Virus record (IMG/VR): IMGVR_UViG_3300037010_003311
Coordinates: 124,001-188,000 of that record
DNA length: 64,000 bases
Strand: one strand, 5' to 3'
This document shows positions 3,588-59,868 of this stretch, one piece after another. Within the stretch, counting starts at the first letter, position 1; each line of letters starts with the position of its first letter. Below the pieces are notes generated by a model. It saw only the letters and a program-made list of their open reading frames with translations, searched no databases and had not been told where the DNA came from. Made by a program: the position numbers and the translations under genes.

Positions 3588-6500
3588 TTAATGTTTTGTA
3601 TACAATGGTGCAAATTGTACATCTTTAAATTTAGGATAACTATAAACCTTTTCAATGTAATCCCATAATGTTTCAGAATTCTTTTGATTATTTTTAATCT
3701 GTTCAAGCTGTTGGGCTAAAACATTTAATCCTTGGTTTGCGGTGTTTGCTGCAGCCAGGGCAACAGCATTCGACTGCTCTAGCAATTGGTTGCTAGCCTT
3801 TAATTGTTCATTATGTGTTTTCAATTGTGCCATAGTTTCTTCATGTTGTGCTTTAACCTGTTTATGCGAATCAACTACCGCTTTTTTAACTTTATCAACC
3901 CCTGAACTTGTTGTATCAGTCGCACTAGTTCCACTACCATTACCAGAAATACTAGTAACTAAAGAATCTATAGTTGATGTTGTGGTTTTAATCGCATCAT
4001 CGGTTGCTTTAGCTTGAGCAGTTACTCCACCTTCTATATAACTACCAGTTAAATTTAAAATGGTATTGCTTATTATTTTATCGAGTGCGGCATCTAAATC
4101 ACCACTAGAATAATGGCTCTTAAATGGCACATGTTTTTTCAGTTGAGCTCGTAAATCATTGATTTCTGCTCTTGTAATTTTTCCATCGGCTGACGCCTTT
4201 TTATACCACGGCCCAGTTACTCCATTCATATAATTGTATTCTGAAGTTAAATATTGTTGAAGGGATTTAATCTTTTTATCTGATTGATTAGAGGTTACAA
4301 AATTTTTTAAAGATGCTGGCATATTAGAAAAATAGTTTTGTTCCCAAAAATCTTCTTGTATTTTGCCAACCCCTTTCATATTTAATAATTGTTTTAACCA
4401 GGCTCGTTGGGAGTTAGATAAAACTTTACCATTTTTTGCAGCATCTACCGCATCATCTATTAATGATTTATGTTGTATATAAAATGAGTCGTTTTGAATA
4501 CTTTTATCTGCTAAAATTTTATCTAATACTTGTCCAGCCACTCCAGCTTTTCTATCAAATTGGTAGGCACCTATAGCATTTAAAGTGCCTTTATCATCCC
4601 CCGATTCATTATAGCGAATGTTTCCATAATCGGCATTTGCTGTTCCAGTTTCTCGTAAATGTAATATCGATTTAAAATCACCTTTACCAAATTGTGCAGT
4701 AAATTGATCAATTCTCTTGCCACTGACTACAGCATCTGTATTCGTTTGCCCAGTACCTAAACCGGCTGCATCTTTTATAGTAGATGATATCTGTTCACCC
4801 ATATAGGTTATAACTTTACCGAGTGATAAAAATGGACCAAATATAACTGAACCAAGAATACCACCAATCAACATACCAATAATACTATCTTCCCCAAAAA
4901 TCATACTTGATACTTTCATACCCTCTTTTACACCAGGCATATTTTCTTTAAGCCAACCACCAGTTTTTTTAGCAGCTCCTTTAAAATCAAAATTGCTAAT
5001 AGCTTTAGAAATTTTTACTATACCAGCTTCTGCATAATTACCTAAGATACCACCAATACCTGCTCCAAGTACTGATCCAAGACCTGGCAGTAAGTATGTA
5101 CCAAGTATACCACCAACTCCAGCTCCAATAGTAATTCCTAGATTATTTTTTACCATATTACTAATAGCTTCCCAAGTGGTAGCTTCAGAACCATCACTAT
5201 TAGTTTCAAATTGTTTAAACCAGTCTTGGAATTTATCTTGCGCTAATTTACCAATCATTGATCCTACCATCATGCCCGGATAACCACCAATTGCAAAACC
5301 TGCTGCACCACCAAGTATTGAACCAGCGTCTTTAATTAGGTTCCCACTAACCGATTTTATTTTATCTAAAAAGCTACGGTCTTTACCAGTCTTTGGATCA
5401 GTATCTGGTTCCATTAAATAACCAAGTACAGCATCACCACCAAGAGCTAGTAACCCAGCTTTACCCATACCAGCAACCTTACCACCAAGATATGAATTAG
5501 CAGATACGGCAGCTCTACCTGCCGCCCTACCCGCTTCTTTTAAAGTCGCTTTAGTATTAGTACGGACTTGTTTAAACCAGTTCCCTTTTTCTTTATGTTC
5601 CTCTAGCTTTTTAACATTTTCTCCATGCGCGGATGCTGCTTCACTCATTTTAGCTTTAGCTTCATTTAACTGAACATTGGCATCAAATATTGCTTGCTGT
5701 TTAGCTTCCTTAGCTGCTTTACTTTTAGCTTCGGTTGCATTAACCCTATCCAGATGGTCTTGTGCACTATTAATCGCGTCCATCTTACCTTTTAAATGTT
5801 CTTTAGTTTTATCGGCTTCTGCTTTAAGAGTAGCTTCTTTAATATGTCTGGCATTAACCATATCCATAATGGAGCCACCAAAATTTTTAAGACCTGGTAT
5901 TTTATTAACTAGGAAAGATGCAGTCTTACCAACAACGGCAGCTAGAATCATACCAGATACCGCAAGATGACCCCTCACCATGTCGGTTAATGATTTATAT
6001 TTATCATTCATTTTAGATAAAGCCGCAGCCAGCCCGAAAGCACCAAGCATTAAAGGCATTGATGTTAAGAAATTATCATCACCTCGTTCTTTCTTAGTCT
6101 TTGGATCGAGAAAACTAGCTATTCTAGCTAACCAGCGGATCTGTTCAGTTTGAGCCGTATTATTTTTCTTTAATTCCTCGGTCTGAGCTTCTTCATTTAT
6201 AAAAGCTTTAGCTTGAGCATCCTTTTGTTCTTGTGCTTGGGCTTTCTGTAAGTCAGTTTCATTCCCCCCAGCTAGACCTAGATGGTTGCGGCGATCAGCT
6301 TCTAAGAATGAAACCATCTCTGGAAATTTAGAAACTTGCCATTTAGGAATAACATGTTCGTCTTCGTGGACTACCCCAACTGGTTTTTCACCAGAGCTAT
6401 CAGGTTTAGTACCAGGTTTTGCTTTACCAGTATCACCCCCATCATTAAAACCTCTTCCGCCAGAGGCCATATGTGCCATAAGGGGATCAAATTCGTTTAC

Positions 6501-8573
6501 TAAATCCCGAATATGATTAAAATTATTATAAGCATATTCTCTAGATCTACTTACCGCGCGCCTACCAGCTAATTGTTCAAAGATCATACCCATAGTACTA
6601 TTTGGGAGGGTTTGACCTAACTCTCGTCTAAGTTTATCTTTAATAGTTTTATTACGAGCTCGTATTTCGTCAGCTGTCATAAGTTTACCGCTGAACTCGT
6701 CCATTGTTCTATCTTCGTCAGCTTGGAAAACACCAAGTTTATTACCGCGGCGTTGACGCTTAGATTCCATCTCAGCTAGGAATTTTAAATAATGGGCCTG
6801 TTCCGCATTATAGTTAACTAGTTTAGTAACTTGGTTAACGAAGTCCCCACTTAAGTAACTAGACATTAAATCAGATTTACTTAAACGATTTGCTCCAATA
6901 GCTGTGCGTAAGGTTCCTTCATCTTGTTCAGGATTAGAGTAAGTACTAGCCATATAGTTCTTGAGTTCTTTTTTTGCTCTATTCCAAAACGAGTCCGTCG
7001 GGTTACCGTCGCTGTCTACACCTTTCCAAGCATTATGTATATTCTTTATCCCTTTCCGACCCATTTTAAAGCCGCCAGATAGCGTATGCCATCCAGGAAT
7101 ATAACCAAGCATTTCATCTAAACCTTGCCATAACGATTCGAATGGCATATCTGGGTGGTCTTCTTCTTGTAAGGTTCTCTTTAAAAGATCTCCGGCATGA
7201 CCAGGTCTAGCTATACCAAAACCATCTTTACGAATACTTAATAATTCGTGACCAAGATACCTAATACCCTCATACATACCAGCAGCGAGCGAAATAGATT
7301 TAGAATAGTAAGAATCACTCGATTGAAGCACTTGGGCAGCACTAGTATGTAAAAGATCAGTAAATGCTACACTTATACTAAATTTTTCACTAAACTCTTG
7401 CTTAGCGTCCATTTCATGACGTTTACGATTTGCCCTATTAAATAACTCAACGCTACTTTTACCAGACAAAGTATTACCAATTTGATCACCAATAGATACT
7501 ACTGATTTAAGGTTTTGCCCAAATTGTGCAAAGCTTTGAGCAGCTTTCTGTAACATGTTTGGTGCCCGGCGAGTACCTTTTTGGTTATATATAGCAGCAT
7601 AACCATCTTCGCCAAACTTTTCGGAAGCTACATTTTGACCAGAGTTTGCTCCACCAACATCCTTATATTCTCTAGCATTAATAACTTCCTCAGCCATCGG
7701 TGCCAATACGCTTGTATGGCTCTCGATTAGCATTAAGACGTTAACCATTAAAGCTTCAGCTGGTGTTAATTGGCCTAACCCTTGGAGCAACCGTAATTGG
7801 CCTTGGATCTGAATCATATTACTATGTTGAATTTCTAACTGCATACCATTATGCAGTTGCATATTAGTATTAGCTGTAAACCGCTTAATATTATATGAAC
7901 CAGCGGCATCCATCATTTTAGACAGTTTACCCCCAGCCATATTAAGGGCCATCATAGTCATAATACCCATCAGTGCTGGTGGCATACTGCCAAGTAGTGC
8001 GCCTTTTGTTCCAGCACCTAAGAGAGAACCTATATTACCAGCTCCACCCATCATACCAGCGGAGAACATACCTAGGCCCTTGCCACCCGACATAGCACCC
8101 ATAAGGGTAAGTGGACTAACATCATGTAAAATATCTGGCATATAACCTAGAGCACCAGCTGCTTTAATAGCTGCACCAGTCGTCCCAATAGACTTACCAA
8201 TGTTAATTAAACCCATATTAGATAAAGCAGCTATATCTCCACCGGAATTTTGATAGCCTACTCTAGAACGGAGAGTAGCAATAGTCTTAATGTTTGCTTG
8301 GTTTTGTTGTTGTGTTTTATAACCGGTTGCCAAATCTCTTAAAGCTGTTGCCCCCATACCAACTGCACCCATATGTTGCATTATTGGACTACTGGTAGCA
8401 TTAGCAACTCCGGGTAATGCTGAATGGCCCATAGCGGAAAGCATTTTAAGCAGACTTAATTTTTGAGCAAGTGAACCCGCACTATCCATAATTGTAGAAG
8501 CTATTTTGCTCTCTTCCATCTCGCGTAACTCGCGCTCATATCGAGCACGTATTTCGTCTATATTTTGGCTCAT
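3588..8573 (-). CDS. Tail tape measure protein with C-terminal lysozyme-like domain
   Basis: 1661 aa with Ala/Gly-rich amphipathic and coiled-coil stretches, the GG-x-TG...GVVHEDEHVIP motif common in tape measure proteins, and a LRET...GAYQF lysozyme-like motif near the C-terminus. Confidence 0.8.
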   Translation of the reverse strand: MSQNIDEIRARYERELREMEESKIASTIMDSAGSLAQKLSLLKMLSAMGHSALPGVANATSSPIMQHMGAVGMGATALRDLATGYKTQQQNQANIKTIATLRSRVGYQNSGGDIAALSNMGLINIGKSIGTTGAAIKAAGALGYMPDILHDVSPLTLMGAMSGGKGLGMFSAGMMGGAGNIGSLLGAGTKGALLGSMPPALMGIMTMMALNMAGGKLSKMMDAAGSYNIKRFTANTNMQLHNGMQLEIQHSNMIQIQGQLRLLQGLGQLTPAEALMVNVLMLIESHTSVLAPMAEEVINAREYKDVGGANSGQNVASEKFGEDGYAAIYNQKGTRRAPNMLQKAAQSFAQFGQNLKSVVSIGDQIGNTLSGKSSVELFNRANRKRHEMDAKQEFSEKFSISVAFTDLLHTSAAQVLQSSDSYYSKSISLAAGMYEGIRYLGHELLSIRKDGFGIARPGHAGDLLKRTLQEEDHPDMPFESLWQGLDEMLGYIPGWHTLSGGFKMGRKGIKNIHNAWKGVDSDGNPTDSFWNRAKKELKNYMASTYSNPEQDEGTLRTAIGANRLSKSDLMSSYLSGDFVNQVTKLVNYNAEQAHYLKFLAEMESKRQRRGNKLGVFQADEDRTMDEFSGKLMTADEIRARNKTIKDKLRRELGQTLPNSTMGMIFEQLAGRRAVSRSREYAYNNFNHIRDLVNEFDPLMAHMASGGRGFNDGGDTGKAKPGTKPDSSGEKPVGVVHEDEHVIPKWQVSKFPEMVSFLEADRRNHLGLAGGNETDLQKAQAQEQKDAQAKAFINEEAQTEELKKNNTAQTEQIRWLARIASFLDPKTKKERGDDNFLTSMPLMLGAFGLAAALSKMNDKYKSLTDMVRGHLAVSGMILAAVVGKTASFLVNKIPGLKNFGGSIMDMVNARHIKEATLKAEADKTKEHLKGKMDAINSAQDHLDRVNATEAKSKAAKEAKQQAIFDANVQLNEAKAKMSEAASAHGENVKKLEEHKEKGNWFKQVRTNTKATLKEAGRAAGRAAVSANSYLGGKVAGMGKAGLLALGGDAVLGYLMEPDTDPKTGKDRSFLDKIKSVSGNLIKDAGSILGGAAGFAIGGYPGMMVGSMIGKLAQDKFQDWFKQFETNSDGSEATTWEAISNMVKNNLGITIGAGVGGILGTYLLPGLGSVLGAGIGGILGNYAEAGIVKISKAISNFDFKGAAKKTGGWLKENMPGVKEGMKVSSMIFGEDSIIGMLIGGILGSVIFGPFLSLGKVITYMGEQISSTIKDAAGLGTGQTNTDAVVSGKRIDQFTAQFGKGDFKSILHLRETGTANADYGNIRYNESGDDKGTLNAIGAYQFDRKAGVAGQVLDKILADKSIQNDSFYIQHKSLIDDAVDAAKNGKVLSNSQRAWLKQLLNMKGVGKIQEDFWEQNYFSNMPASLKNFVTSNQSDKKIKSLQQYLTSEYNYMNGVTGPWYKKASADGKITRAEINDLRAQLKKHVPFKSHYSSGDLDAALDKIISNTILNLTGSYIEGGVTAQAKATDDAIKTTTSTIDSLVTSISGNGSGTSATDTTSSGVDKVKKAVVDSHKQVKAQHEETMAQLKTHNEQLKASNQLLEQSNAVALAAANTANQGLNVLAQQLEQIKNNQKNSETLWDYIEKVYSYPKFKDVQFAPLYTKH

Positions 8574-8601
8574 ACTACCTCTTTAAAAAAATTTTTTTAA
8601 C

Positions 8602-8679
8602 TTTTATTTCAAAAGTTTCTAGAAATCCTATAGCTTCAAAGCTATAAAAACATGTGTAATATAGAAATATACCTCTATG
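8602..8679. repeat. Left arm of 78-bp inverted repeat flanking terminase
   Basis: Reverse complement matches 10874-10951 at 70/78 positions (manual alignment). Confidence 0.9.
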
Positions 8680-8734
8680 ATTGCAATTATCTCTAAGCAG
8701 CTATAAAAAATATTTCTAATATGATCGAAATTTT

Positions 8735-10660
8735 TTACATAATAATAAAGCTATTGAAATCGAAATCTTTGCTCGAACTTTTATTACGCTTAGCATCAAT
8801 TTTTTCAGCATGTGTTAGAGCTGAATCATCAGACTCATATATAATTTTATTTGCTCTGGATTTAACAACCAGGTTTTCATCTCTAGTTATAAGAGAGATA
8901 GATAAATAATCTTTTATATTTGCTGGGTTAAGCCCATATACTAATTGATTTTCTTCGATCTGTAAAATATTTTTCTTAATATTATATTTTCTTACCCAGA
9001 GTGTGAATCCGTAAGCTAAAACAACGTCATCATGTGAATTCTTACCTGCTTCGATTCTACCATTACGTTTATTCTCTAGGGTCCTAAGATCTTCTATTAA
9101 TAAGTCACCATGTATATATTCTGGATAAGTATTAACCATATACATAATTTCATTAAACATTTCATCCCGTTTACCACTACCTATATTTCCAGAATTGCTA
9201 GTATAGAAGCCATATACTATATCATCAGTATCACCAATGTGTTCTTTATACATATACTCGGAATAATCGAAAGCATCATATAATGGATCGGTATATAATA
9301 ATTCTTCTACTACTTCTTTACCAATACTATTTCTTTCGATAATAACTAAAAGATTCATTGGTGAAAGCTTATATTCAAGCGTTAAACCTTTAATACAACT
9401 TTTAAGTAGAGCCGCAAAACGTTTAACTACTGAAAACTTACCCTTCCATTCACCAACTTGTTGCCCAGATCTGGCATCTATTAAAACTAGAGCACTGAAA
9501 TCCGAATGTGGTCCAGCCGACATAGCGGTATCCACCCCTAGATAATATATTCCAAAAGGATCTAGTGGGGCAAATAGTTTAAATTTATTACCAAATGGTA
9601 ACACTAGTTCACTATCTGGTGTCTTAGCTATAAGTTTCATAATAACTTCATCTTCGAATAACGAAGTAGTTGAACCAAGGAAGTTAAGGTCAAGCTCTTG
9701 GTTAATTTTTCTGGTATCGAAGTTAAGTTCGCGTTTTTGTTCTTCATACCATTCTTGTGATCTAAATTCCGACCAATGTAATCTAAGACTAATGAAGTTA
9801 TTTCTTGACTTATCCCCTAACTCATCCATATAAGTTGGATATAGTTCTTTATTTTCATAATCGTATATATTATCAAAATGGGTACTGTTCTGATATATAT
9901 TATGGAAAAAGTTATCGCCGGCACCATTTGGAGTACTAGTAAATATAATACCATTTGGATAACCAAATTTTTTAGCAAAAATCTTAGCCGCAGAAATAGA
10001 TGGTTGCATAGCACCCCATACAGTTTGGGCATGTGGGATAAAAGCAGTTTCATCTATAAATACTAAGGGATTAGAAAGACCCCGACCTACCTTATCTGGA
10101 TCATTACTACCCGAAACAAAGCTAGCGGATATCTTACTACCATTCTTTAATTGTAAATAAGTTAACCTTTCCGCACTATTAGCATTTGGTACTTGTAACC
10201 AGATTGGTAAAGAATCCATCATCTCTTTCATACGGGAAATCATATCCAAAGCTCTCGTCTTATCCAGTGTTAAATAAGAAATTTGTAGTTTAGGGTAGAA
10301 TATCATACAATATAGTAAATAGAGGGCAGAAGTAGTTGTTTTACCTGATTGACGAGAACTCATATAAAGTACAGCATCATGCTGGTGAAACAGTTCTATT
10401 AATATTCTATACTTATTAGTGGAATTCCATTGTTCGGATTCCGCCATTGGAATACGTCCACCTGGTACCGGAATACTAATATAGTTTTCTATAAAATATA
10501 ATGGTGACATTTTACATTTGAACCATTCAATAGTTCTTTCATATGGGTTAAATGAATTTTTTTGTTTTTCAGTTAAGTAAGTATGTACTGGTAATGTATC
10601 AGTAGATTCTATAATTATTTCTGGATTAACGATTGAACGAATATCCTGTTTTCCAGACAT
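8735..10660 (-). CDS. terL: Terminase large subunit (T4 gp17-like)
   Basis: KCKMSPLYFIENY, Walker A SRQSGKTT, Walker B VFIDETAF, coupling motif TSTPNG, nuclease motifs LGVDTA and HDDVV. Confidence 0.95.
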   Translation of the reverse strand: MSGKQDIRSIVNPEIIIESTDTLPVHTYLTEKQKNSFNPYERTIEWFKCKMSPLYFIENYISIPVPGGRIPMAESEQWNSTNKYRILIELFHQHDAVLYMSSRQSGKTTTSALYLLYCMIFYPKLQISYLTLDKTRALDMISRMKEMMDSLPIWLQVPNANSAERLTYLQLKNGSKISASFVSGSNDPDKVGRGLSNPLVFIDETAFIPHAQTVWGAMQPSISAAKIFAKKFGYPNGIIFTSTPNGAGDNFFHNIYQNSTHFDNIYDYENKELYPTYMDELGDKSRNNFISLRLHWSEFRSQEWYEEQKRELNFDTRKINQELDLNFLGSTTSLFEDEVIMKLIAKTPDSELVLPFGNKFKLFAPLDPFGIYYLGVDTAMSAGPHSDFSALVLIDARSGQQVGEWKGKFSVVKRFAALLKSCIKGLTLEYKLSPMNLLVIIERNSIGKEVVEELLYTDPLYDAFDYSEYMYKEHIGDTDDIVYGFYTSNSGNIGSGKRDEMFNEIMYMVNTYPEYIHGDLLIEDLRTLENKRNGRIEAGKNSHDDVVLAYGFTLWVRKYNIKKNILQIEENQLVYGLNPANIKDYLSISLITRDENLVVKSRANKIIYESDDSALTHAEKIDAKRNKSSSKDFDFNSFIIM

Positions 10661-10695
10661 CTGTATTCCTTATAATTTTTAATTATTTTTATACC

Positions 10696-10702
10696 ATTTG
10701 TT
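10696..10702 (-). promoter_or_regulatory. AACAAAT candidate late-promoter motif (also 22185-22191, 26705-26711, 27619-27625, 38035-38041, 42622-42628)
   Basis: Same heptamer found 25-98 nt upstream of five virion/packaging genes and one hairpin RNA. Confidence 0.5.
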
Positions 10703-10751
10703 AAAAATATGTACTTTAGTATCGATTTTAGTTACATGCAACTAAGCTCAT

Positions 10752-10782
10752 ATGGGCTTACGAGCACCACTCGTAAGCCCAT
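10752..10782. other. 13-bp perfect hairpin upstream of terminase
   Basis: ATGGGCTTACGAG-cacca-CTCGTAAGCCCAT; no clear U tract, role unknown. Confidence 0.6.
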
Positions 10783-10873
10783 CTAAAGCAAAAATTCCAA
10801 GCACCCTCAACTAGTATAAAAAAATCAGTCGTTTATAAGTGATAAAAAATCTAACCTTAGCTATAATCCTAAA

Positions 10874-10951
10874 CATAGAGGTATATTTCTATATTACTTA
10901 TGTTTTTATAGCTTCAAAGCTATAGAATTTTTAGAACTTTTTGAAATAAAA
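10874..10951. repeat. Right arm of 78-bp inverted repeat flanking terminase
   Basis: Partner of 8602-8679; contains TATAGCTT-CA-AAGCTATA and the TATAGAAATAT motif. Confidence 0.9.
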
Positions 10952-11071
10952 ATCAAAAATTCGAAATCACCAACCGGAAATGTACTAAGTATCCGTAAAT
11001 ATCTAGTGAAAAATTTTGAAAAAATAAATTTAAACTTACTGTATTAAGTGGGCTCATCGATTGTAGTTACT

Positions 11072-11118
11072 AATATCTTTATTTGAGCGACAGGAAAAGT
11101 TACTTAGGCCATGTGGCC
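11072..11118. repeat. 47-bp direct repeat, copy downstream of endonuclease gene
   Basis: AATATCTTTATTTGAGCGACAGGAAAAGTTACTTAGGCCATGTGGCC is identical to 12744-12790. Confidence 0.95.
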
Positions 11119-11120
11119 AT

Positions 11121-12686
11121 TTAATCTAATTTATATGTAATAGACCCGGAATCATAAATTATAGCAAATTTATTATCTATTATAGTTTGAAGTTCATTAT
11201 TTGTAGATAAATTTTTTTCAAAACCAAATTTAGTTTTATGATTTTGAAATTCTGATTCGGAAAATAAAACATTACTATTATTGAGATGCCAATAAAAAGG
11301 TTCTGGTTCATTAATTGTAAATTCTTTAAAACCCAGCGTTTTATATAAATTATCGTTATCCCAACGTCTATCTATAGTAGTTTTAATTGACCCAACATAT
11401 TTTTCTCTAAAATTATTTAGTAATTTGCTAGCAGCCTCTAGTATATTATAACCAAGTTTGTTACAAAATCTTACTAATAACCATTCGTTGTCATTATCTG
11501 AGTTATTAAAAACCATTAAACTCATTAATTCTGCATCTTTATATAAACCATACGCTAGTGTACAATTGGTATAACCTTGTAAATGGTTATATTCTAGAAA
11601 AGTTTTTGCTTCTAGCTTAGATACATTCTTAATTTTTAAATCATTAGCATCAAGTTTTATACCTTTATCTAAAGTACCAGTGATTATAGATTTCCAGATA
11701 TTTTGTTTAATTGGGTTAATCCATTCTGTTTCAAATATATGTAATAGTTTTATGCCTTTGCTTTGGCAGGCATTGGTCTTTTGTAAGTGCCTAGATTGAC
11801 ATGTATATAATTGAGTCTGTTTAGTACATGATGCTCTTTTCTCAGACATATAACTGTGCCAATAAATACCATTATATTCAATTGCTAGTTTATAGTCTGG
11901 TACGTAAATATCTAATTCGTATGGTTTAATAACATCTCTTATATTTTCTTGGATTAAACTTTCTGGGATATTTATTTTAATTATATCAAGTACCTGCTTT
12001 TCAGAAATACTAATAAATGATAACCGGTTATAATCAATTTTTAATTCTTTAATTTTTTGATGTGTCCTAGCTTCCGAACAATTGAAATAAGTTTGGCATT
12101 TGATATAATCAAATCGTTTATCTTTATCAAGAAACTCTTCTATCCAGAATTCTTTATTATTCCAATTTTCAAAATTTAATAAATGACTATTTTTAAAATG
12201 CGAGCTTCCATATTTTTCTAAATTTTTATCCCTCATTTTAGATTTGGATGCTTCTAGCATATTTGGGTGCTTAACTCCATATATAAAAAGACAGGTTTCC
12301 CTACGTTTTCGAATAACTTCCGGGTTACTGGCAGCACAATTATAACCGGTCCGTTCAAAATAAGTTTCTTTTGCCTTAATTCTGGTTTCTTTTATTTTAC
12401 TTGGGTGATTAACCCCATATTTTTGCATACAAGTATTAATAGTATTGGTTTGTTTAATCCGAGCTCTGATTTCTTTAGTATTTTGCTTACAATTGAGATG
12501 CCCACATGTTAAACCATATCCCCGAGTGGTAGTAAAGAACTTTCTTATATTATTACAATCCATATTCAAGCATTTTAAATTCTCCAGATTTAAATTAAAT
12601 TTAAACTGATATTTAATAGCTTGTTTAATATCTTTAATTGTAATATCTGGAAATTGTGTTAATAATTCTTCTTCGGTAATGGTCAA
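11121..12686 (-). CDS. Free-standing homing endonuclease-like protein (Hef-like): Zn finger + KYG repeats + PD-(D/E)xK domain + NHLQG C-terminal domain
   Basis: C-x4-C...C-x4-C; ~23-aa KYG/YG repeats; ELDIYVPDYKLAIEYNGIYWHS nuclease motif; C-terminal NHLQG...RFC...YDSG domain. Confidence 0.8.
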   Translation of the reverse strand: MTITEEELLTQFPDITIKDIKQAIKYQFKFNLNLENLKCLNMDCNNIRKFFTTTRGYGLTCGHLNCKQNTKEIRARIKQTNTINTCMQKYGVNHPSKIKETRIKAKETYFERTGYNCAASNPEVIRKRRETCLFIYGVKHPNMLEASKSKMRDKNLEKYGSSHFKNSHLLNFENWNNKEFWIEEFLDKDKRFDYIKCQTYFNCSEARTHQKIKELKIDYNRLSFISISEKQVLDIIKINIPESLIQENIRDVIKPYELDIYVPDYKLAIEYNGIYWHSYMSEKRASCTKQTQLYTCQSRHLQKTNACQSKGIKLLHIFETEWINPIKQNIWKSIITGTLDKGIKLDANDLKIKNVSKLEAKTFLEYNHLQGYTNCTLAYGLYKDAELMSLMVFNNSDNDNEWLLVRFCNKLGYNILEAASKLLNNFREKYVGSIKTTIDRRWDNDNLYKTLGFKEFTINEPEPFYWHLNNSNVLFSESEFQNHKTKFGFEKNLSTNNELQTIIDNKFAIIYDSGSITYKLD

Positions 12687-12743: not shown

Positions 12744-12790
12744 AATATCTTTATTTGAGCGACAGGAAAAGTTACTTAGGCCATGTGGCC
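12744..12790. repeat. 47-bp direct repeat, copy upstream of endonuclease gene
   Basis: Identical to 11072-11118. Confidence 0.95.
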
Positions 12791-22293: not shown

Positions 22294-23601
22294 TTAATCT
22301 ATTTTAAAAACAAAATTACCGGAATCAAAAATAGCTTTATAACCATTAAGGTCTATAACTAGTTCTTTTTCAGTTAAATTTTCTTTATATACTTCAAGCT
22401 TTGTTTCAAGCTTATGTTTTTGGAAACTCTGTCGACTATGAAGTTTTGGTAAATTGTAATTATCAGTAATGTCTTCTCGCCAATAAAAATAATTTGGCTC
22501 AGCAACCTTTTCTTCATGGAATCCAATCTGTCTATATAAGTTTCCTTCTGACCAACGCCTATTTGCATATGATTTAATACTACCTGTATATTTAGCTTTG
22601 AATGCTTTGAGTAACCTGCTTGCACCACCTACTACACTATAACCTTTTGCATTACAAAACCGCATAAGCTCCCAATCTGTATTCTTATCAAATCGGCTTT
22701 TACTAAATGTCATAATAGATACTAATTCTTTTTGGTAGAATAAAGCAAATCGAATAAGTGCTTTACCAGTTCCTTGCAAGTGGTTACTTTCAACGAACTG
22801 ATTGCTTATTTTTAATAAACCTTTATGAGCCCGGTTGCTAGAATCAATCTCTATAATATCACATTTCCGAGCATAAATTCTATTAGATAAACCAAGAGCA
22901 TTTATTATCATGCTTTTCCAAATAAGTTGTTTGTTAGGATGTAGCCATTCTATATCATACATATATAGTACTTTTATACCAGTTTCAAGGCCACGATTAG
23001 TTGTATTCAAAAAATTATTTTTTTTGGATTTAAGATTACTTCTGGCTTCGATAATTGATTCGGCATTTGGAGTGATTGGGGTAAGCTTAGTAGCTAATTC
23101 TTTACTAATAAGGCTATCATTCAATAACTCGACTATTACTATCGAAACTTGTTGGTCTGGGAAATATATATCATTATCTAAAATATTAGCCTTATCACCA
23201 GCTAATACATAGTTAAATGATCTAGCCTCCAGCCACTGTACAATACTAGCAATAATAGTTTTTTTATTATTATATGTAGCCTCAGCTGGTAGAATATTTG
23301 GGATGGTTGGTACCTCTGGTTCCACAGCTTGAGTTATATGTTTCTTTTTAGATATAGTATTTACAATTTTAGTGATTTTCATATCTTTAATAGTACTAGC
23401 CATTTTAGCTTGGCAAGAATCACTACAGCAATATTTAAAACCAGCATCCGAATTTTTCCAAGCTTTTAAATTACCGCAATCCGGATTAATGCATTCTAAA
23501 TTATCTAAAGTTAATTGGAACTTATCCTTGTATTTTAGAATTCGTTTTATATTGAATTTATCTATGTTTGGATAATACTCTTTAAGTGTCGCTTCCGTCA
23601 T
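22294..23601 (-). CDS. Hef-like endonuclease paralog with degenerate nuclease motif
   Basis: Likely start ATG 23601 (AAGGGA RBS, 1 nt after the upstream stop). Shared N-terminal Zn-finger domain, no KYG repeats, DNDIYFPDQQVSIVIVELL in place of the nuclease motif, complete NHLQG domain. Confidence 0.75.
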   Translation of the reverse strand: MTEATLKEYYPNIDKFNIKRILKYKDKFQLTLDNLECINPDCGNLKAWKNSDAGFKYCCSDSCQAKMASTIKDMKITKIVNTISKKKHITQAVEPEVPTIPNILPAEATYNNKKTIIASIVQWLEARSFNYVLAGDKANILDNDIYFPDQQVSIVIVELLNDSLISKELATKLTPITPNAESIIEARSNLKSKKNNFLNTTNRGLETGIKVLYMYDIEWLHPNKQLIWKSMIINALGLSNRIYARKCDIIEIDSSNRAHKGLLKISNQFVESNHLQGTGKALIRFALFYQKELVSIMTFSKSRFDKNTDWELMRFCNAKGYSVVGGASRLLKAFKAKYTGSIKSYANRRWSEGNLYRQIGFHEEKVAEPNYFYWREDITDNYNLPKLHSRQSFQKHKLETKLEVYKENLTEKELVIDLNGYKAIFDSGNFVFKID

Positions 23602-23602
23602 T

Positions 23603-24790
23603 TTATCCCTTTTTAATTTTGAGTTCGTGTGGGTCATCTGTTCGCAGCTGTAATTGTCCAGAATCATATACCTGGAATTGAGTAGATTCAGTTTTAATTT
23701 TTGGCTCAATTATTAAATATTCTTCTAGGTTTATAGATTCTAGATAGCACCCATCGTCCAAAACATATGAAAAAGCCACTTCCGTAGCCCTTGGTTCTAA
23801 TTTAAATTTTATTGCATTCTGGATTTTAGAAATATTTTTTTCATAAGTATCTGTTTCATAAAGGTGTACTAAGCTAATACCAGCAGCAATACAAGCTAAT
23901 GATTTCTGCTGATGGTAGTACTTATCTGTACCAGCTTCAGTACTATGCCAATATAAACCATTATATTCCACGGCAAGTTTTAATGCCGGAATATAAATAT
24001 CCAACTCTAGTGGTTTAATTATGCTACGGTTGTTAGTATTGACCTCGTAGCCTAGTTCTTGTATGTAGCTAGCAAGCTGCTGCTCTTTTAAGCTGGAACC
24101 TTTAAACTTTTTATATTGTATGTTTAATCGCTTAGCTCTTTGCCATAAATGACCAGAGGTACAATTAAAGTGGTTCATACATTTTTCAATATTTAAATAA
24201 CCATCAACCATTAAAAAGTTTTCTGCCCAATATTTAGCATCATCCCAATGTACAAAGTTAGTAATATGCTTATTTAGATGGTTTTTACCAGCACCATATT
24301 TATTAGAGTTTGTATCTTTTGCTTTCAATATTGCTTCTGGATTCGAGGTAGTATGTTCATAACCAGTTCTAGTTAAATAAGTTTGTTTAGCTTTTAATCT
24401 GGTTTCTTTAATTTTACTAGGATGTTCAACTCCATAATTTTTAAGAGATGTTAATTTCTTCTTCTCTTTAATTAATGGGCTACAGCTATTGTATTCAAAT
24501 CCAAATCGTTTGAGGTTAGTAGCTTTTTGTTTAGAAAACATTATTTCTAAAATTTTGGGCTTAGAAACATTTTTACAAATGTCGCTACCACAAGTATGAC
24601 CGAATCCTTGCGTAGAATTTTGCCACTTCCGTAACAAACCGCAACTAGGATTAATACATTTAATATTGGCTACAGTATATTGGAACTTAGTTTGGTATTT
24701 GATGGATCGTTTCAAATCTATTAGCTTGGCATCAGGGAATTGGGCTCGTAACATTTCTAGGGTTAATGACATTGTTACAGAATCTGACAT
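23603..24790 (-). CDS. Homing endonuclease-like protein (Zn finger + KYG repeats + PD-(D/E)xK), short C-terminus
   Basis: ELDIYIPALKLAVEYNGLYWHS; lacks the NHLQG domain. Confidence 0.8.
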   Translation of the reverse strand: MSDSVTMSLTLEMLRAQFPDAKLIDLKRSIKYQTKFQYTVANIKCINPSCGLLRKWQNSTQGFGHTCGSDICKNVSKPKILEIMFSKQKATNLKRFGFEYNSCSPLIKEKKKLTSLKNYGVEHPSKIKETRLKAKQTYLTRTGYEHTTSNPEAILKAKDTNSNKYGAGKNHLNKHITNFVHWDDAKYWAENFLMVDGYLNIEKCMNHFNCTSGHLWQRAKRLNIQYKKFKGSSLKEQQLASYIQELGYEVNTNNRSIIKPLELDIYIPALKLAVEYNGLYWHSTEAGTDKYYHQQKSLACIAAGISLVHLYETDTYEKNISKIQNAIKFKLEPRATEVAFSYVLDDGCYLESINLEEYLIIEPKIKTESTQFQVYDSGQLQLRTDDPHELKIKKG

Positions 24791-57916: not shown

Positions 57917-58562
57917 AACCAGCTTTTGATATCCAATCTTTTTTAAATCTATTATAAATCTCAGTTGATTCTTCCAATGTATCAGCGTCACGAATCTCAT
58001 TTTTTAGTTTACAATAATTATCGTATGCGGCAAACGCTCTAGATATTTCATCCTTATTCATTAGATACTTTTCTAGAAGATCAATAAGTTCATCATTTTC
58101 TTTTTCTAATATTTCAATATACTTTTCTTCTTTATTTGCATCAGTAATAAAATAACCTTGTTCCATAAGACTATTATTTAGTACTATAAATTCATAATAG
58201 GTAAGATTTGCAACTGTATTAATTTTTTGATCAAAGAATCTTTCTGCTTCAAGTAATATGTTTTGCTTCGCTTGTTCAAGCAATACATCAACGTGTATCT
58301 CTGGTAAAGAATCTTTTACAACTATATCATATGGCTCGAGTTTTGTTAAACCTCTAAATTCGGTTATCAATACCGCTTTATCAAGTTTTAGGTATTTGTC
58401 TACTTTTGTAGCACTTGCTTTAGTTAATGGTGCAATCCTATACCCAATATCATAATCCTTAAGTTTACTACTAGTTTGATCAATGATTTCGATTATTTGA
58501 TATAGGCCAATCTGTATTTTTTTACATAATGCAAATTTTGCTGCATTTTGATTTTTTTCCAT
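57903..58562 (-). CDS. Hypothetical protein in radical SAM operon
   Basis: Likely start ATG 58562 (AAGGA RBS); helical, acidic C-terminal half. Confidence 0.7.
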   Translation of the reverse strand: MEKNQNAAKFALCKKIQIGLYQIIEIIDQTSSKLKDYDIGYRIAPLTKASATKVDKYLKLDKAVLITEFRGLTKLEPYDIVVKDSLPEIHVDVLLEQAKQNILLEAERFFDQKINTVANLTYYEFIVLNNSLMEQGYFITDANKEEKYIEILEKENDELIDLLEKYLMNKDEISRAFAAYDNYCKLKNEIRDADTLEESTEIYNRFKKDWISKAGYVSI

Positions 58563-59868
58563 TCGAATTTTCCTTAATTTTAATTTTACCAGCGTTCCAT
58601 AAGGCGCGGGTTTTGTGCACCATCCGGCTTTCTGGTTCAAGTATTTTATAATCTACACCAAGTGGATAGCAACCAGAATCCAAGTCATATATATCTATCA
58701 CAGTGTCTGGATCATAAGCTATAAATTTATCTATTTGCTCTTTCCAATTGCTTAAGTTTATATCTTCATATAACTGAAGCAACCGAATACCGGCCTCTAA
58801 GCAGGCTAAAGCTTTTCGTTGGTGTCGGTACTTACAAAAATCGTAATCTAGTTGTTGTGAGCTGATCCCTATGGTTTCGTGGTAGCTATGCCAATAACTA
58901 CCATTCCATTCTATTGCCAATTTTAAGCTAGGTATCCAAATGTCTAGCTCCTGATTTGGTATTATGGTCCGTTCATTTGCTACCGCTGGAACACCTAAGC
59001 TTTCTAAATATGGTATTATAGCTTGTTCCTGTAAACTAGTTGCTGCGGTCTTGGTATATTTTATACCAAGTTTTTTAATTTGGGTATGGGTAGCTGGTTG
59101 TTCACAATTAAAATAATCCATACATGTTATATAATCAAAATAATTATCGTTTGTTATAAAATTTCTTTTCCAGAATTCGATATCGTTCCAATATTTAGCA
59201 TTAGTATAATGTTTACGTTTTGGATTACTTACCCCATATTTTTCGATATTATTTTTAATCATCTTTTCTTTAATATCTTTATTTTGTAAAGGTTTTGATA
59301 CACCATACTTAATTAAACTTGATTCCTGTTGTTTACGTTTAATTTCTGAATTAGAATTTGGACTTTTGGTACCATATTTTTCGATATTATTTTTAATCAT
59401 CTTTTCTTTAATTGCCGGATGTTGCATAGAAGTTGTATAACCATATATTTGTAAACAAGCTTCTTGTTGCTTACGCTTAATTTCCGGGACCGAATTCGGG
59501 CTGCTGGTACCATATTTTTTAATACTGTTTTGAACCATTTTTTCTTTAACCACTAAACTTTGAATAGGGTTTTCGACACCAAATCTATCTAAACTAGTTT
59601 GTTTATATTTTATTTTTCTTAATCTAATTATTTCCGGCCTCATTATATTATAGCATTCGGTTGAACAACAATATTTGAGCCCAGATTTTGTAGTACCTTT
59701 CGATTTCAAATTTTTACAATCCTGATTTAAACACTTTATATTTTCTAAAGTTAACTCAAATTTTAATTGATATTTTACTATAAAATTTAATTGTCGGATT
59801 GTTAAATTTTTTGCTTCTGGATACGCATCTTTAATTAATTCTGGGGTTAATTTATGTTTCTGTAACAA
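58522..59868 (-). CDS. Homing endonuclease-like protein (Zn finger + six KYG-type repeats + PD-(D/E)xK)
   Basis: ELDIWIPSLKLAIEWNGSYWHS; exact 41-bp internal duplication at 59234-59274 and 59372-59412. Confidence 0.8.
   Translation of the reverse strand: MLQKHKLTPELIKDAYPEAKNLTIRQLNFIVKYQLKFELTLENIKCLNQDCKNLKSKGTTKSGLKYCCSTECYNIMRPEIIRLRKIKYKQTSLDRFGVENPIQSLVVKEKMVQNSIKKYGTSSPNSVPEIKRKQQEACLQIYGYTTSMQHPAIKEKMIKNNIEKYGTKSPNSNSEIKRKQQESSLIKYGVSKPLQNKDIKEKMIKNNIEKYGVSNPKRKHYTNAKYWNDIEFWKRNFITNDNYFDYITCMDYFNCEQPATHTQIKKLGIKYTKTAATSLQEQAIIPYLESLGVPAVANERTIIPNQELDIWIPSLKLAIEWNGSYWHSYHETIGISSQQLDYDFCKYRHQRKALACLEAGIRLLQLYEDINLSNWKEQIDKFIAYDPDTVIDIYDLDSGCYPLGVDYKILEPESRMVHKTRALWNAGKIKIKENSNGKKSKCSKICIM

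What the first reader, a model, noticed from the sequence alone, without database searches (positions are those of the whole stretch)
8602..10951. Terminase gene enclosed by a 78-bp inverted repeat with inward-facing promoter motifs and a direct-orientation palindrome core
Seen: 8602-8679 and 10874-10951 are 70/78 identical in inverted orientation, with weaker similarity for ~18 bp further inward. Each arm has TATAGAAATAT pointing into terL, so the left one is antisense and is the only plus-strand copy I saw. Each also has TATAGCTT-CA-AAGCTATA, whose asymmetric CA core reads the same on the plus strand in both arms although the flanks are inverted. Inference: an invertible or recombinase-type cassette, an antisense switch that delays terminase expression, or paired packaging/replication sites.
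Basis: partly seen in the sequence, partly recalled or inferred. Interest (0 to 1): 0.7.

Follow-up and report, generated by a model that had tools for sequence, protein, structure and literature searches.

The report
Convergent promoter modules bracketing terminase gene
The inverted repeat around this uncultured jumbo phage's terminase gene is real, but it is two copies of a promoter-plus-operator module, which puts face-to-face promoters at both ends of the gene; that most likely gives antisense control of terminase, not a DNA-flipping switch.

Summary
They are the only such pair in the 226.7-kb phage record.

Each arm is a composite regulatory module:
- an A/T-rich palindrome;
- a 16-18-bp box, ATAGC-N6-GCTAT ("PAL");
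- exactly 14 bp of spacer;
- the phage's own promoter motif, TATAGAAAT.

That motif has 30 copies, 24 of them in the 8.6% of the record that is non-coding. Most sit about 30-50 nt upstream of replication and nucleotide-metabolism genes. The record encodes multisubunit RNA polymerase subunits.

The right arm is terL's sense promoter. The left arm is an orphan antisense promoter at terL's 3' end. The antisense module is the conserved one: it recurs downstream of terL in three of the four related lineages with DNA, and as part of a compact pair upstream of terL in the fourth. Their neighbouring proteins are only 31-45% identical.

Nothing supports an invertible cassette. No recombinase gene was found. 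Every contig and every relative shows one orientation. The "direct CA core" fits a flip of the palindrome's centre.

Best reading: convergent, co-regulated promoters give antisense interference with terL. No transcript data were available, so this is untested.

The parts
8594..8697 (+). Left arm of the inverted repeat, read inward on the plus strand. It lies in the spacer between the terL stop codon and the start of the 1661-aa tail gene.
   Evidence: 88/104 matches to the right arm. It is conserved in strain variants.
8599..8617 (.). Outer A/T-rich palindrome of the left arm (AACTTTT-ATTTC-AAAAGTT). It is homologous to the leader of the large tail gene in relatives L020 and L023.
   Evidence: Sequence, fold and alignment A2.
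8629..8646 (.). PAL box of the left arm (TATAGCTT-CA-AAGCTATA; core ATAGC-N6-GCTAT). Putative operator for a dimeric DNA-binding protein.
   Evidence: All three N6 PAL boxes in the record lie exactly 14 nt from a TATAGAAAT motif. The half-site sequence is invariant in all but one of the instances found in the relatives.
8660..8670 (+). Antisense promoter motif TATAGAAATAT pointing into the 3' end of terL. It is followed by 8671-8679, which on the minus strand forms a degenerate sense-facing partner (CATAGAGGTAT, 8669-8679).
   Evidence: No conserved antisense ORF lies downstream.
8735..10660 (-). terL, terminase large subunit, 641 aa.
   Evidence: Pfam PF03237, PHROG phrog_2, and 71-80% identical homologues in metagenomes.
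10661..10882 (-). Roughly 220-nt non-coding leader between the right-arm promoter and the terL start codon. It contains a strong G+C-rich hairpin at 10752-10782.
   Evidence: Fold gives -30.8 kcal/mol, z -5.4. The hairpin region varies or is replaced in other strains. No Rfam match.
10856..10959 (-). Right arm of the inverted repeat, read inward on the minus (coding) strand. It is the sense promoter module of terL.
   Evidence: In relative L003 the same module sits 65 nt upstream of the terL start codon.
10883..10893 (-). Sense promoter motif TATAGAAATAT of the right arm.
10907..10924 (.). PAL box of the right arm, 14 nt upstream of the promoter motif.
10935..10954 (.). Outer A/T-rich palindrome of the right arm.
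11121..12686 (-). Free-standing homing endonuclease gene directly upstream of the terL unit. It is flanked by a perfect 47-nt direct repeat of the terminator module (11072-11118 and 12744-12790). This is context, not part of the inverted repeat.
   Evidence: phrog_3339, E 2.5e-87. Direct repeat. The gene is present in some relatives and absent in others.
3588..8573 (-). 1661-aa tail gene (weak tape-measure similarity) downstream of terL. In the window it has no intact promoter motif of its own, so it is probably co-transcribed with terL.

Best explanation
What each arm is. Reading inward, each arm holds an A/T-rich palindrome, the PAL box ATAGC-N6-GCTAT, exactly 14 bp of spacer, and the phage's conserved promoter motif TATAGAAAT(AT). 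PAL has 5-bp half-sites about one helical turn apart, so it is probably the operator of a dimeric regulator. If transcription starts about 6 nt after the motif, PAL is centred near -40.

What the motif is. It is most likely read by the phage's own multisubunit RNA polymerase. It heads replication and nucleotide-metabolism genes, so it probably belongs to an early or middle class.

What the two arms do. The right arm is terL's sense promoter, with a 220-nt leader. The left arm is an inverted copy in the spacer between terL and the tail gene, and it fires back into terL. terL is therefore bracketed by two convergent promoters under the same operator. While this promoter class is active, polymerase collisions and a non-coding antisense RNA across terL would hold terminase expression down.

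How the repeat arose. It came from inverted duplication or gene conversion of the ancestral downstream module. It is not a site for programmed inversion.

Shown versus inferred. Shown: the anatomy, the motif's genome-wide behaviour, and its conservation. Inferred: promoter activity, the antisense RNA, its effect on terL, and the protein that binds PAL.
For: The motif behaves as a promoter.
- There are 30 copies of TATAGAAAT. By my base-composition estimate about 13 are expected. The 11-mer has 14 exact copies against about 1.5 expected.
- 24 of the 30 lie in the 8.6% of the record that is non-coding, and 17 of those are in sense orientation.
- Most sense copies sit about 30-50 nt upstream of a start codon.
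- The genes they head include RNase H, clamp loader, dNMP kinase, a nucleotide-sugar epimerase, radical-SAM enzymes and a homing endonuclease.
- No copy precedes the major head protein or tail sheath genes within the window.

The phage has its own polymerase. The record encodes beta- and beta'-like RNA polymerase subunits. In such jumbo phages the only promoter class that can be found bioinformatically is a conserved AT-rich motif of about 10 nt near -10 (PMC7598289, PMC5312081).

PAL is tied to the promoter.
- ATAGC-N6-GCTAT occurs three times in the record, against about 0.2 expected by my estimate. Each copy is exactly 14 nt from a TATAGAAAT motif: the two arms and genome position 210,433.
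- The same spacing of 14 nt (15 in one case) holds in relatives L003, L001, L020 and L023.
- The half-site sequence is the same in all but one of the instances (one L001 copy reads GCGAT), and the centre varies. That points to sequence-specific protein recognition, not a purely structural hairpin.

The antisense module is conserved.
- TAT[A/G]GAAA(A)T, then 14 nt, then PAL lies downstream of terL in the window, L003, L020 and L023. In L001 it is part of a compact face-to-face pair upstream of terL.
- The flanking tail protein is only 31-45% identical among these phages.
- In strain variants the left arm is more conserved than the coding flanks. None of the listed differences falls in 8533-8678, against 3-5% in the flanks. 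A roughly 90%-identical relative differs at 3 of 72 arm positions against about 9% overall.

Other support.
- No antisense ORF is conserved.
- A second convergent pair of the same motif, also with PAL, encloses 267 nt of non-coding DNA at genome 210,122-210,444.
- The outer part of the arm is homologous to the tail gene's leader in L020 and L023. So the downstream copy is the original and the right arm is the duplicate.
- Precedents exist. Early antisense RNAs cover the structural genes of phage PAK_P3 (PMC4933390). Phikmvvirus phages share a conserved antisense phage-specific promoter (PMC10914365).
Against: - No RNA data exist for this phage. The only runs labelled RNA were probably DNA and came from a roughly 90%-identical relative, held as strandless contigs. 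Promoter activity, timing and the antisense transcript are all inferred.
- If the sense and antisense promoters share one motif and one operator, they fire together. It is then not obvious how that would time terL expression, as opposed to simply damping it.
- No plus-strand terminator that would bound the antisense RNA was found.
- At least three related lineages manage without the pair. L025-L027 have no copy of the motif. The contigs carrying P0003 and P0002 leave only 26-108 nt between the genes.
- In L020 and L023 the antisense motif is altered (TATGGAAAAT). Polymerases of this kind can be intolerant of single changes to their promoter (PMC5312081).
- No candidate PAL-binding protein was identified.
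Confidence: 0.5

Rival explanations
1. The repeat is a neutral by-product of recombination. The left or right arm is a leftover of promoter-cassette shuffling, or of double-strand-break repair driven by the homing endonuclease next to terL. On this reading the antisense copy has no regulatory role.
For: - The locus is a hotspot. A homing endonuclease flanked by a perfect 47-nt direct repeat sits next to the right arm.
- The gene content upstream of terL differs among relatives.
- Regulatory cassettes occur as repeat pairs elsewhere in the record.
- The arms within one genome are more alike (78% and 69%) than arms compared across genomes (48-64%). That implies repeated duplication or gene conversion.
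- T4-type PeSL cassettes recombine in this way (PMC2839356).
Against: - The antisense module keeps its motif, its spacing and PAL across lineages whose neighbouring proteins are only 31-45% identical.
- The module is more conserved than the coding flanks in strain variants. Neutral DNA would have decayed.
- Presence of the homing endonuclease does not track presence of the repeat.
Confidence: 0.2
2. PAL acts as an RNA or single-stranded DNA hairpin, for example a terminator, a processing site or a stabilising stem, and not as a double-stranded operator. This would explain why its loop reads the same on one strand in both arms.
For: - The 2-nt centre is in direct orientation in the window and in L003.
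- In L003 the box is followed by a run of T when read inward. In L020 and L023 it is followed by TTTGTTTTT on the sense strand.
- In L020, L023 and L003 the sense promoter places PAL in the 5' leader of the tail gene's mRNA.
Against: - The stem is weak, 5-8 A/T-rich pairs. The arm folds are only modestly better than shuffled sequence, z -1.1 to -2.6.
- T runs are not on a consistent side. The window has AAAAAC when read inward and GGATTTCT or GAATTTTT when read outward.
- The stem sequence is nearly invariant, with no compensatory variation in the five core pairs.
- The phage's apparent terminators are a different motif, with longer G+C-rich stems.
- The outer PAL pair of L001 is a strict inverted copy, so the centre is not always in direct orientation.
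Confidence: 0.12
3. The repeat is an invertible or excisable terL cassette. Recombination between the arms would flip terL. Recombination between the two 18-21-bp direct PAL copies would excise it. Either event could act as a switch on terminase.
For: - 104-bp arms would be a substrate for a recombination-proficient phage.
- The design is symmetrical, with an inward promoter on each side, so terL would stay expressed in either orientation.
- PAL resembles a recombinase site: 8-bp inverted half-sites around an asymmetric 2-bp centre.
- PeSL pairs in T4-type phages excise mini-circles (PMC2839356).
Against: - No serine or tyrosine recombinase is in the record, although the record is only 81% complete.
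- Contigs from four mat or sediment runs and four wastewater runs cross both arms only in the reference orientation, with no strand-changing joint.
- All five related lineages with DNA, and the two for which only gene tables were returned, have terL co-oriented with its neighbours.
- The cores lie in direct orientation, which excludes inversion by a site-specific enzyme.
- The arms are 15% diverged, and the left arm's orthologue in other strains is closer to it than the paralogous right arm is.
- Excision of an essential gene has no evident use.
Confidence: 0.06
4. The arms are paired sites for DNA packaging or replication. PAL could be a binding site for the small terminase subunit, bracketing terL. 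Alternatively the orphan promoter could prime an R-loop origin.
For: - The sites lie beside terL.
- The left-arm promoter is an orphan next to A/T-rich palindromes, which recalls the T4 origins that depend on a promoter transcript (from memory, not checked here).
- In T4, short homologies flanking gene 17 are synapsed by the small terminase subunit (from memory, not checked here).
Against: - Cumulative GC skew shows nothing at this locus. Its only turning point is the strand switch at 98.5 kb.
- A third PAL module lies 75 kb away at an unrelated gene.
- No small terminase subunit gene is recognisable nearby.
- Read termini could not be tested, because only contigs were available.
Confidence: 0.07

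Closest known systems
Cis-antisense control of phage genes from a promoter at the target's 3' end (lambda oop RNA against cII; early antisense RNAs over structural genes in PAK_P3 and PAK_P4; the conserved antisense phage-specific promoter of Phikmvvirus)
   Same: A promoter on the non-coding strand lies just beyond the 3' end of the target gene. No ORF follows it. It is conserved among relatives. The target is a late-function gene (PMC4933390, PMC10914365; lambda oop from my own knowledge and as mentioned in PMC4933390).
   Different: Here the antisense promoter is an inverted duplicate of the gene's own sense promoter module, and both carry the same operator-like box. No transcript has been observed. 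No terminator defines a short RNA.
PeSL regulatory cassettes of T4-type phages (promoter-early stem-loop)
   Same: Both are short composite cassettes of a promoter plus a stem-loop or palindrome. Both occur as repeats that flank genes at variable loci next to homing endonucleases. Both show evidence of recombination or duplication between copies (PMC2839356, PMC4122927).
   Different: PeSLs are sigma70-like early promoters with G+C-rich terminator stems. They are numerous, lie in direct orientation and flank non-essential ORFans. T4-type gene 17 (terL) lacks them and served as the negative control in that work. Here there are only three PAL modules, the pair is inverted, it brackets the essential terL, and the motif is not sigma70-like. 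The phage's stem-loop plus TTTTCCTGTCG modules are a closer analogue of PeSLs than the arms are.
Early (virion RNA polymerase) promoters of RNA-polymerase-encoding jumbo phages (phiKZ, AR9, phiR1-37)
   Same: The motif is a highly conserved AT-rich element of about 10 nt, present in dozens of copies upstream of non-structural genes. The genome encodes beta- and beta'-like subunits (PMC7598289, PMC5312081).
   Different: The sequence differs from the AR9 early motif (AAATATATATTAT-N6-G). Only one beta-like match and one split beta'-like gene were detected in this 81%-complete record. An upstream palindromic box at a fixed distance is not mentioned in the passages I read on those promoters.
Site-specific invertible switches (Hin/hix, Gin/gix, FimB/E-fimS)
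   Same: Inverted repeats bracket a segment, promoters are involved, and a small palindromic site has an asymmetric 2-bp centre.
   Different: There is no recombinase gene. The cores are in direct orientation. The promoters sit in the arms and point inward, not inside the segment pointing outward. The arms are long and diverged. Only one orientation is seen.

Membership tests
Site-specific invertible DNA switch (Hin/Gin/Fim type) | A dedicated serine or tyrosine recombinase is encoded nearby or elsewhere in the genome. | tested here: not met
   PF00239 and PF00589 give no match in the 226.7-kb record, while the control genomes gave matches. Caveat: the record is estimated to be 81% complete.
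Site-specific invertible DNA switch (Hin/Gin/Fim type) | The crossover sites have identical asymmetric cores in inverted orientation. | tested here: not met
   The CA centre reads the same on the plus strand in both arms, so it is in direct orientation.
Site-specific invertible DNA switch (Hin/Gin/Fim type) | Both orientations are present in a population. | tested here: inconclusive
   Only the reference orientation appears in contigs from eight runs. Assembled contigs drop minor variants, and raw reads were not available.
PeSL mobile regulatory cassettes (T4-type phages) | A composite of a promoter plus a stem-loop in intergenic DNA. | tested here: met
   PAL plus 14 nt plus TATAGAAAT in both arms.
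PeSL mobile regulatory cassettes (T4-type phages) | Many dispersed copies in direct orientation flanking non-essential ORFans, with a sigma70-like promoter and a terminator stem. | tested here: not met
   There are three PAL modules only. The pair is inverted around the essential terL. The motif is not sigma70-like, and the sigma70 scan is at background, 19 sites against 16.4 expected. The stem is weak.
Cis-encoded antisense RNA control (lambda oop or PAK_P3 type) | A promoter on the opposite strand at or within the target gene, with no ORF of its own. | tested here: met
   An exact promoter motif lies at 8660-8670 (+), 65 nt beyond the terL stop codon. The 62-aa antisense ORF is not conserved in L003, L020 or L023.
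Cis-encoded antisense RNA control (lambda oop or PAK_P3 type) | An antisense transcript is detected, and it affects the target's expression. | not testable with these tools
   No RNA run holds this phage. The runs labelled RNA were probably DNA from a relative, held as strandless contigs.
Jumbo-phage promoters read by a phage multisubunit RNA polymerase (early class) | A conserved AT-rich motif of about 10 nt, over-represented upstream of non-structural genes, in a genome that encodes beta and beta' subunits. | tested here: met
   Definition taken from PMC7598289 and PMC5312081.
Jumbo-phage promoters read by a phage multisubunit RNA polymerase (early class) | Transcription starts a fixed few nucleotides downstream of the motif, and the transcripts appear early and independently of protein synthesis. 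| not testable with these tools
   This needs infection-time RNA mapping, and the phage is uncultured.
MITE or insertion-sequence-like element | Terminal inverted repeats with target-site duplications and multiple genomic copies. | tested here: not met
   The full arm occurs only as this one pair. I saw no target-site duplication at the compact L001 pair. No match in viral contigs, and only four hits in unrelated bacteria in prokaryote genomes, about the number expected by chance on my estimate.

The most novel reading that the evidence does not exclude
The two arms make terL orientation-proof. Recombination between them would flip the essential terminase gene, or PeSL-like exchange between the two direct PAL copies would loop it out. 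Because each arm supplies an inward promoter under the same operator, terL would stay expressed either way. This would be a recombination-active cassette around a core gene. The repeated regeneration of the inverted pair in separate lineages would then be the footprint of that activity.
Probability: 0.07. Interest if true: 0.7.

Novelty: new variant of a known kind. Interest (0 to 1): 0.42.

Why it matters
Almost nothing is known about transcription control in uncultured jumbo phages that carry their own RNA polymerase. In this group, promoters other than the early class are reported not to be predictable from sequence. This locus provides three testable things: a clear promoter motif, an operator-like box at a fixed distance from it at only three promoters, and a conserved antisense promoter aimed at the terminase gene. 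If the antisense reading holds, it extends antisense silencing of late genes (seen in PAK_P3-like phages) to a new phage clade. It would also show a simple evolutionary route, in which a gene gains a sense promoter by inverted duplication of its own antisense promoter. For genome scanning, the practical lesson is that an inverted repeat bracketing a phage gene can be a pair of promoter modules and need not be a recombination site.

Tried and rejected
- Rfam scans of 8400-11300 and of the 210-kb locus found nothing relevant.
- The sigma70 promoter and intrinsic-terminator scans of 8300-11300 were at background levels.
- No serine or tyrosine recombinase was found. PF00940 (T7-type RNA polymerase) and Sigma70_r2 gave no match, but the PF00940 control also failed, so that result says nothing.
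- Megablast of the locus against GenBank phages found nothing. tblastn found only T4-type terL at about 27% identity.
- The module pattern found no match in IMG/VR contigs and four hits in unrelated bacteria in prokaryote genomes, about the number expected by chance on my estimate.
- The 291-kb relative could not be searched whole. DNA for the contigs carrying P0003 and P0002 could not be fetched.
- terL relatives at 51-66% identity (L008-L012) lack the module.
- The 62-aa antisense ORF at 8721-8909 is not conserved, so it was rejected as a gene.
- The leaders downstream of the three PAL promoters share no similarity.
- Small ORFs next to the third PAL module show no DNA-binding domain.
- terL is not unusually similar or dissimilar compared with its neighbours, so there is no sign of transfer as a cassette.
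- GC skew gives no origin or terminus signal at the locus.
- The direct CA core as evidence for a recombinase site was rejected as weak. The centre of the palindrome is the only part that varies among relatives. It appears flipped in the window's left arm relative to L020, L023 and L003. It is direct in two pairs and strictly inverted in the L001 pair. Two transitions or a small inversion of the palindrome's centre would produce it.
Full report
**The observation.** The window is part of a single-contig virus record of 226,657 bp with 31.9% G+C. It came from a microbial-mat metagenome and is estimated to be 81% complete. In the window all long ORFs lie on the minus strand. The repeat finder reports inverted arms at 8594-8697 and 10856-10959, 104 nt and 85% complementary. 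BLAST of the arm against the whole record finds only its partner (E 8.6e-21). Apart from that, only the 12-15-nt core around TATAGAAATAT recurs. Between the arms lies one gene, 8735-10660 on the minus strand. It is a T4-type terminase large subunit (PF03237, phrog_2). The promoter-like 11-mer at 8660 (+) and 10883 (-), and the 18-mer palindrome at 8629 and 10907 with the same CA centre on the plus strand, are exactly as described.

**What the 11-mer is.** Genome-wide there are 30 copies of TATAGAAAT and 14 of the exact 11-mer. From base composition I estimate about 13 and 1.5 by chance. Of the 30 copies, 24 lie in the 8.6% of the record that is non-coding, and 17 of those are in sense orientation. 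Most sense copies sit about 30-50 nt upstream of a start codon. The genes they head are RNase H, clamp loader, dNMP kinase, a nucleotide-sugar epimerase, radical-SAM enzymes, a homing endonuclease and small unknowns. No copy precedes the major head protein or tail sheath genes within the window. The record encodes beta-like and beta'-like RNA polymerase subunits. In jumbo phages that encode their own polymerase, the one promoter class that can be found by sequence alone is a highly conserved AT-rich motif of about 10 nt near -10. It is used for early genes, and in phiKZ and phiR1-37 transcription starts 6 nt downstream (PMC7598289, PMC5312081). I therefore read TATAGAAAT as this phage's own promoter, probably of an early or middle class. 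The timing is an inference.

**What the palindrome is.** The box ATAGC-N6-GCTAT (PAL) occurs three times in the record, against about 0.2 expected by my estimate. All three copies sit exactly 14 nt upstream of a TATAGAAAT motif: the two arms, and a third module at genome 210,433-210,463. The same spacing of 14 nt (15 in one case) is found in every related module I could read (alignments A1 and A2). Across these roughly ten instances the 5-bp half-sites are the same in all but one (one L001 copy reads GCGAT), while the 6-nt centre varies freely. A purely structural hairpin would be expected to vary its stem with compensating changes. An almost invariant stem sequence with half-sites about one helical turn apart looks like the operator of a dimeric DNA-binding protein. 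If transcription starts about 6 nt after the motif, the box is centred near -40. As RNA the element is weak: the arm folds reach only z -1.1 to -2.6. T runs are not consistently on one side. The phage's apparent terminators are a different, much stronger motif (see "Things noticed in passing"). No candidate binding protein was found.

**Relatives.** terL homologues at 71-80% identity occur only in metagenomes, and gene order around terL is conserved.
- L003 (71% identical terL) has the same arrangement: an 83-nt, 76% inverted repeat flanking terL (1781-1863 / 4014-4096). Each arm has PAL, 14 nt and the motif. The upstream module lies 65 nt from the terL start codon.
- L001 (75%) has both arms face to face within about 140 nt upstream of terL. 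PAL boxes lie at 5609-5624 and 5724-5739, with motifs at 5639 (+) and 5708 (-), and a third PAL at 5665-5680 between them.
- L020 and L023 (75-80%) have only the downstream module. PAL is followed 14 nt away by an altered antisense motif (TATGGAAAAT). This sits face to face with a perfect sense motif that would drive the large tail gene.
- L025-L027 have no copy of the motif. The contigs carrying P0003 and P0002 leave only 26-108 nt between the genes.
- terL relatives at 51-66% identity lack the module.

So the element that recurs is the antisense-facing module beside terL, downstream of it in the window, L003, L020 and L023. It is retained although the adjacent tail protein is only 31-45% identical among these phages. 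In strain variants the left arm changes less than the coding flanks.

**How the inverted repeat arose.** The outer part of the arms (TTTCTAGAAACTTTTGAAA...) is homologous to the leader of the tail gene in L020 and L023. The downstream (left) copy is therefore in its native context, and the right arm is an inverted duplicate placed upstream of terL. There the formerly antisense promoter points in the sense direction. Arms within one genome are more alike (78% in the window, 69% in L003) than arms compared across genomes (48-64%). They also share lineage-specific spacers. So duplication or gene conversion happened separately in at least two lineages. On short time scales there is no homogenisation. 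The left arm's orthologue in other strains is 96-99% identical to it, while the paralogous right arm is 85% identical.

**The invertible-cassette reading.** No serine or tyrosine recombinase is present. One contig of run X1 spans 7400-11101 with no differences. Contigs from three further mat or sediment runs and from four wastewater runs cross each arm only in the reference orientation, and no strand-changing joint is reported. All relatives keep terL co-oriented with its neighbours. Contigs cannot exclude a rare inverted form, so this is evidence against a frequent switch, not proof that inversion never happens.

The direct CA core is not good evidence for a recombinase site either:
- the centre is the only variable part of PAL;
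- on the coding strand it reads TG in both window arms but CA in both L003 arms and in L020 and L023;
- the outer PAL pair of L001 is a strict inverted copy;
- the window's left-arm centre looks flipped relative to its orthologues.

Two transitions, or a small inversion of the palindrome's centre, would produce this. With two direct pairs and one inverted pair the sample is compatible with chance. A strand-specific RNA or single-stranded DNA role is not excluded.

**Most likely mechanism.** terL is bracketed by two convergent promoters of the same class, each under the same operator-like box. The right arm would start a sense RNA near 10876, with a 220-nt leader that contains a strong hairpin (10752-10782; -30.8 kcal/mol, z -5.4). 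This hairpin varies or is replaced in other strains. The left arm would start a non-coding antisense RNA near 8677 that runs into the 3' end of terL. The 62-aa antisense ORF is not conserved. Convergent firing would reduce full-length terL mRNA by polymerase collision and by RNA pairing. This is the logic proposed for the early antisense RNAs over structural genes in PAK_P3 (PMC4933390), and it resembles lambda oop. A conserved antisense phage-specific promoter is also known in Phikmvvirus (PMC10914365). The same phage has a second convergent pair with PAL at genome 210,122-210,444, enclosing 267 nt of non-coding DNA in the leader of an 834-aa gene. It also has a few other orphan antisense copies of the motif. 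Opposed promoters therefore look like a habit of this genome. I give about 0.8 to "the arms are promoter/operator modules" and about 0.5 to the full statement including antisense control. No transcript data exist, and co-firing of sense and antisense promoters explains damping better than it explains timing.

**Rivals.**
- A neutral relic of cassette shuffling or of repair driven by the homing endonuclease (0.2). The hotspot nature of the locus supports it. The conservation of the module argues against it.
- PAL as an RNA or single-stranded DNA hairpin (0.12).
- Packaging or replication sites (0.07). GC skew is featureless here, and a third module lies at an unrelated locus. Termini were not testable.
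- An invertible or excisable cassette (0.06).

**Things noticed in passing.** The gene upstream of terL is a free-standing homing endonuclease (phrog_3339, E 2.5e-87). It is bounded by a perfect 47-nt direct repeat of a stem-loop plus TTTTCCTGTCG module. That module occurs 16 times in the record and looks like the phage's terminator signal. Several pairs of it flank small cassettes, which is the closest analogue here of T4-type PeSL cassettes (PMC2839356, PMC4122927).

**Verdict.** The structure is real and conserved and has a coherent regulatory reading. It is a new variant of known kinds (cis-antisense and convergent-promoter control, and repeated regulatory cassettes in large phages). It is not a new kind of element. 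Interest is moderate.

Noticed in passing
window 11072-11118 and 12744-12790; 16 copies genome-wide, for example window 24926, 38066, 42346 and 63614 (minus strand): A conserved module made of a stem-loop followed directly by TTTTCCTGTCG and then an A run. It has 16 copies, 14 of them on the minus strand, and it usually follows gene ends. It is probably the phage's terminator signal. Near-identical pairs flank small cassettes. One perfect 47-nt direct repeat brackets the homing endonuclease gene next to terL, which resembles PeSL cassettes.
   Followed up: partly
window 11121-12686, 22294-23709, 23603-24790 and 58522-59868 (all minus strand): Four paralogous homing-endonuclease-like genes (phrog_3339 and/or DUF7487). 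One lies beside terL and two beside the major head protein gene; those two overlap each other. One is driven by a TATAGAAATAT promoter.
   Followed up: partly
window 10752-10782: A very stable G+C-rich hairpin (-30.8 kcal/mol, z -5.4) in the terL leader of a genome with 32% G+C. One strain variant changes it heavily, and a roughly 90%-identical wastewater relative replaces it with 95 other bases. It shares a 13-nt stem sequence with a terminator-like hairpin at genome position about 210,650.
   Followed up: partly
L028 1623-1650 and 1918-1945 (genome 210,122-210,149 and 210,417-210,444): A second pair of inward-facing TATAGAAAT motifs (28 nt, 96% inverted repeat). One carries a PAL box. The pair encloses 267 nt of non-coding DNA with a nested 53-nt inverted repeat. 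It lies in a non-coding stretch of about 800 nt upstream of an 834-aa gene of unknown function. No Rfam match.
   Followed up: partly
genome positions 280, 1368, 4615, 90192 and 98348 (minus-strand copies; outside the window): Copies of TATAGAAATA that are followed about 8-14 nt later by ATCCTC or ATCCCT. Some have no sizeable ORF downstream or lie next to a gene end. These may be small RNAs with an anti-Shine-Dalgarno-like sequence, or a promoter subclass.
   Followed up: no
genome 78,297-78,988 and 84,117-85,661 (outside the window; L041, L042, L031): The phage encodes beta'-like and beta-like RNA polymerase subunits. The beta' domain match is split into two pieces with two TAA stops inside the scanned frame. 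This suggests a split gene, an intron or an inserted element.
   Followed up: no
L001 5428-5478; L025 about 2940-2990; L026 1-60: Tandem short repeats directly upstream of terL in relatives: seven copies of the heptamer AGTATG(A/C) in L001, and ATTTATTA-type repeats in L025-L027. Contigs L026 and L027 end within these repeats.
   Followed up: no
window 8620-8691 as laid in runs X7-X10: In wastewater runs, two different contigs share the inner 72 nt of the left arm. One continues into terL and the other into 1.6 kb of unrelated sequence. Either the module has a further copy in that relative, or a second phage is present. These runs are labelled RNA-Seq but behave like DNA.
   Followed up: no
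protein hits P0008-P0041: Most terL homologues at 57-65% identity are 800-910 aa long, against 620-670 aa in the close clade. This suggests an extra domain or an inserted element in those terminases.
   Followed up: no
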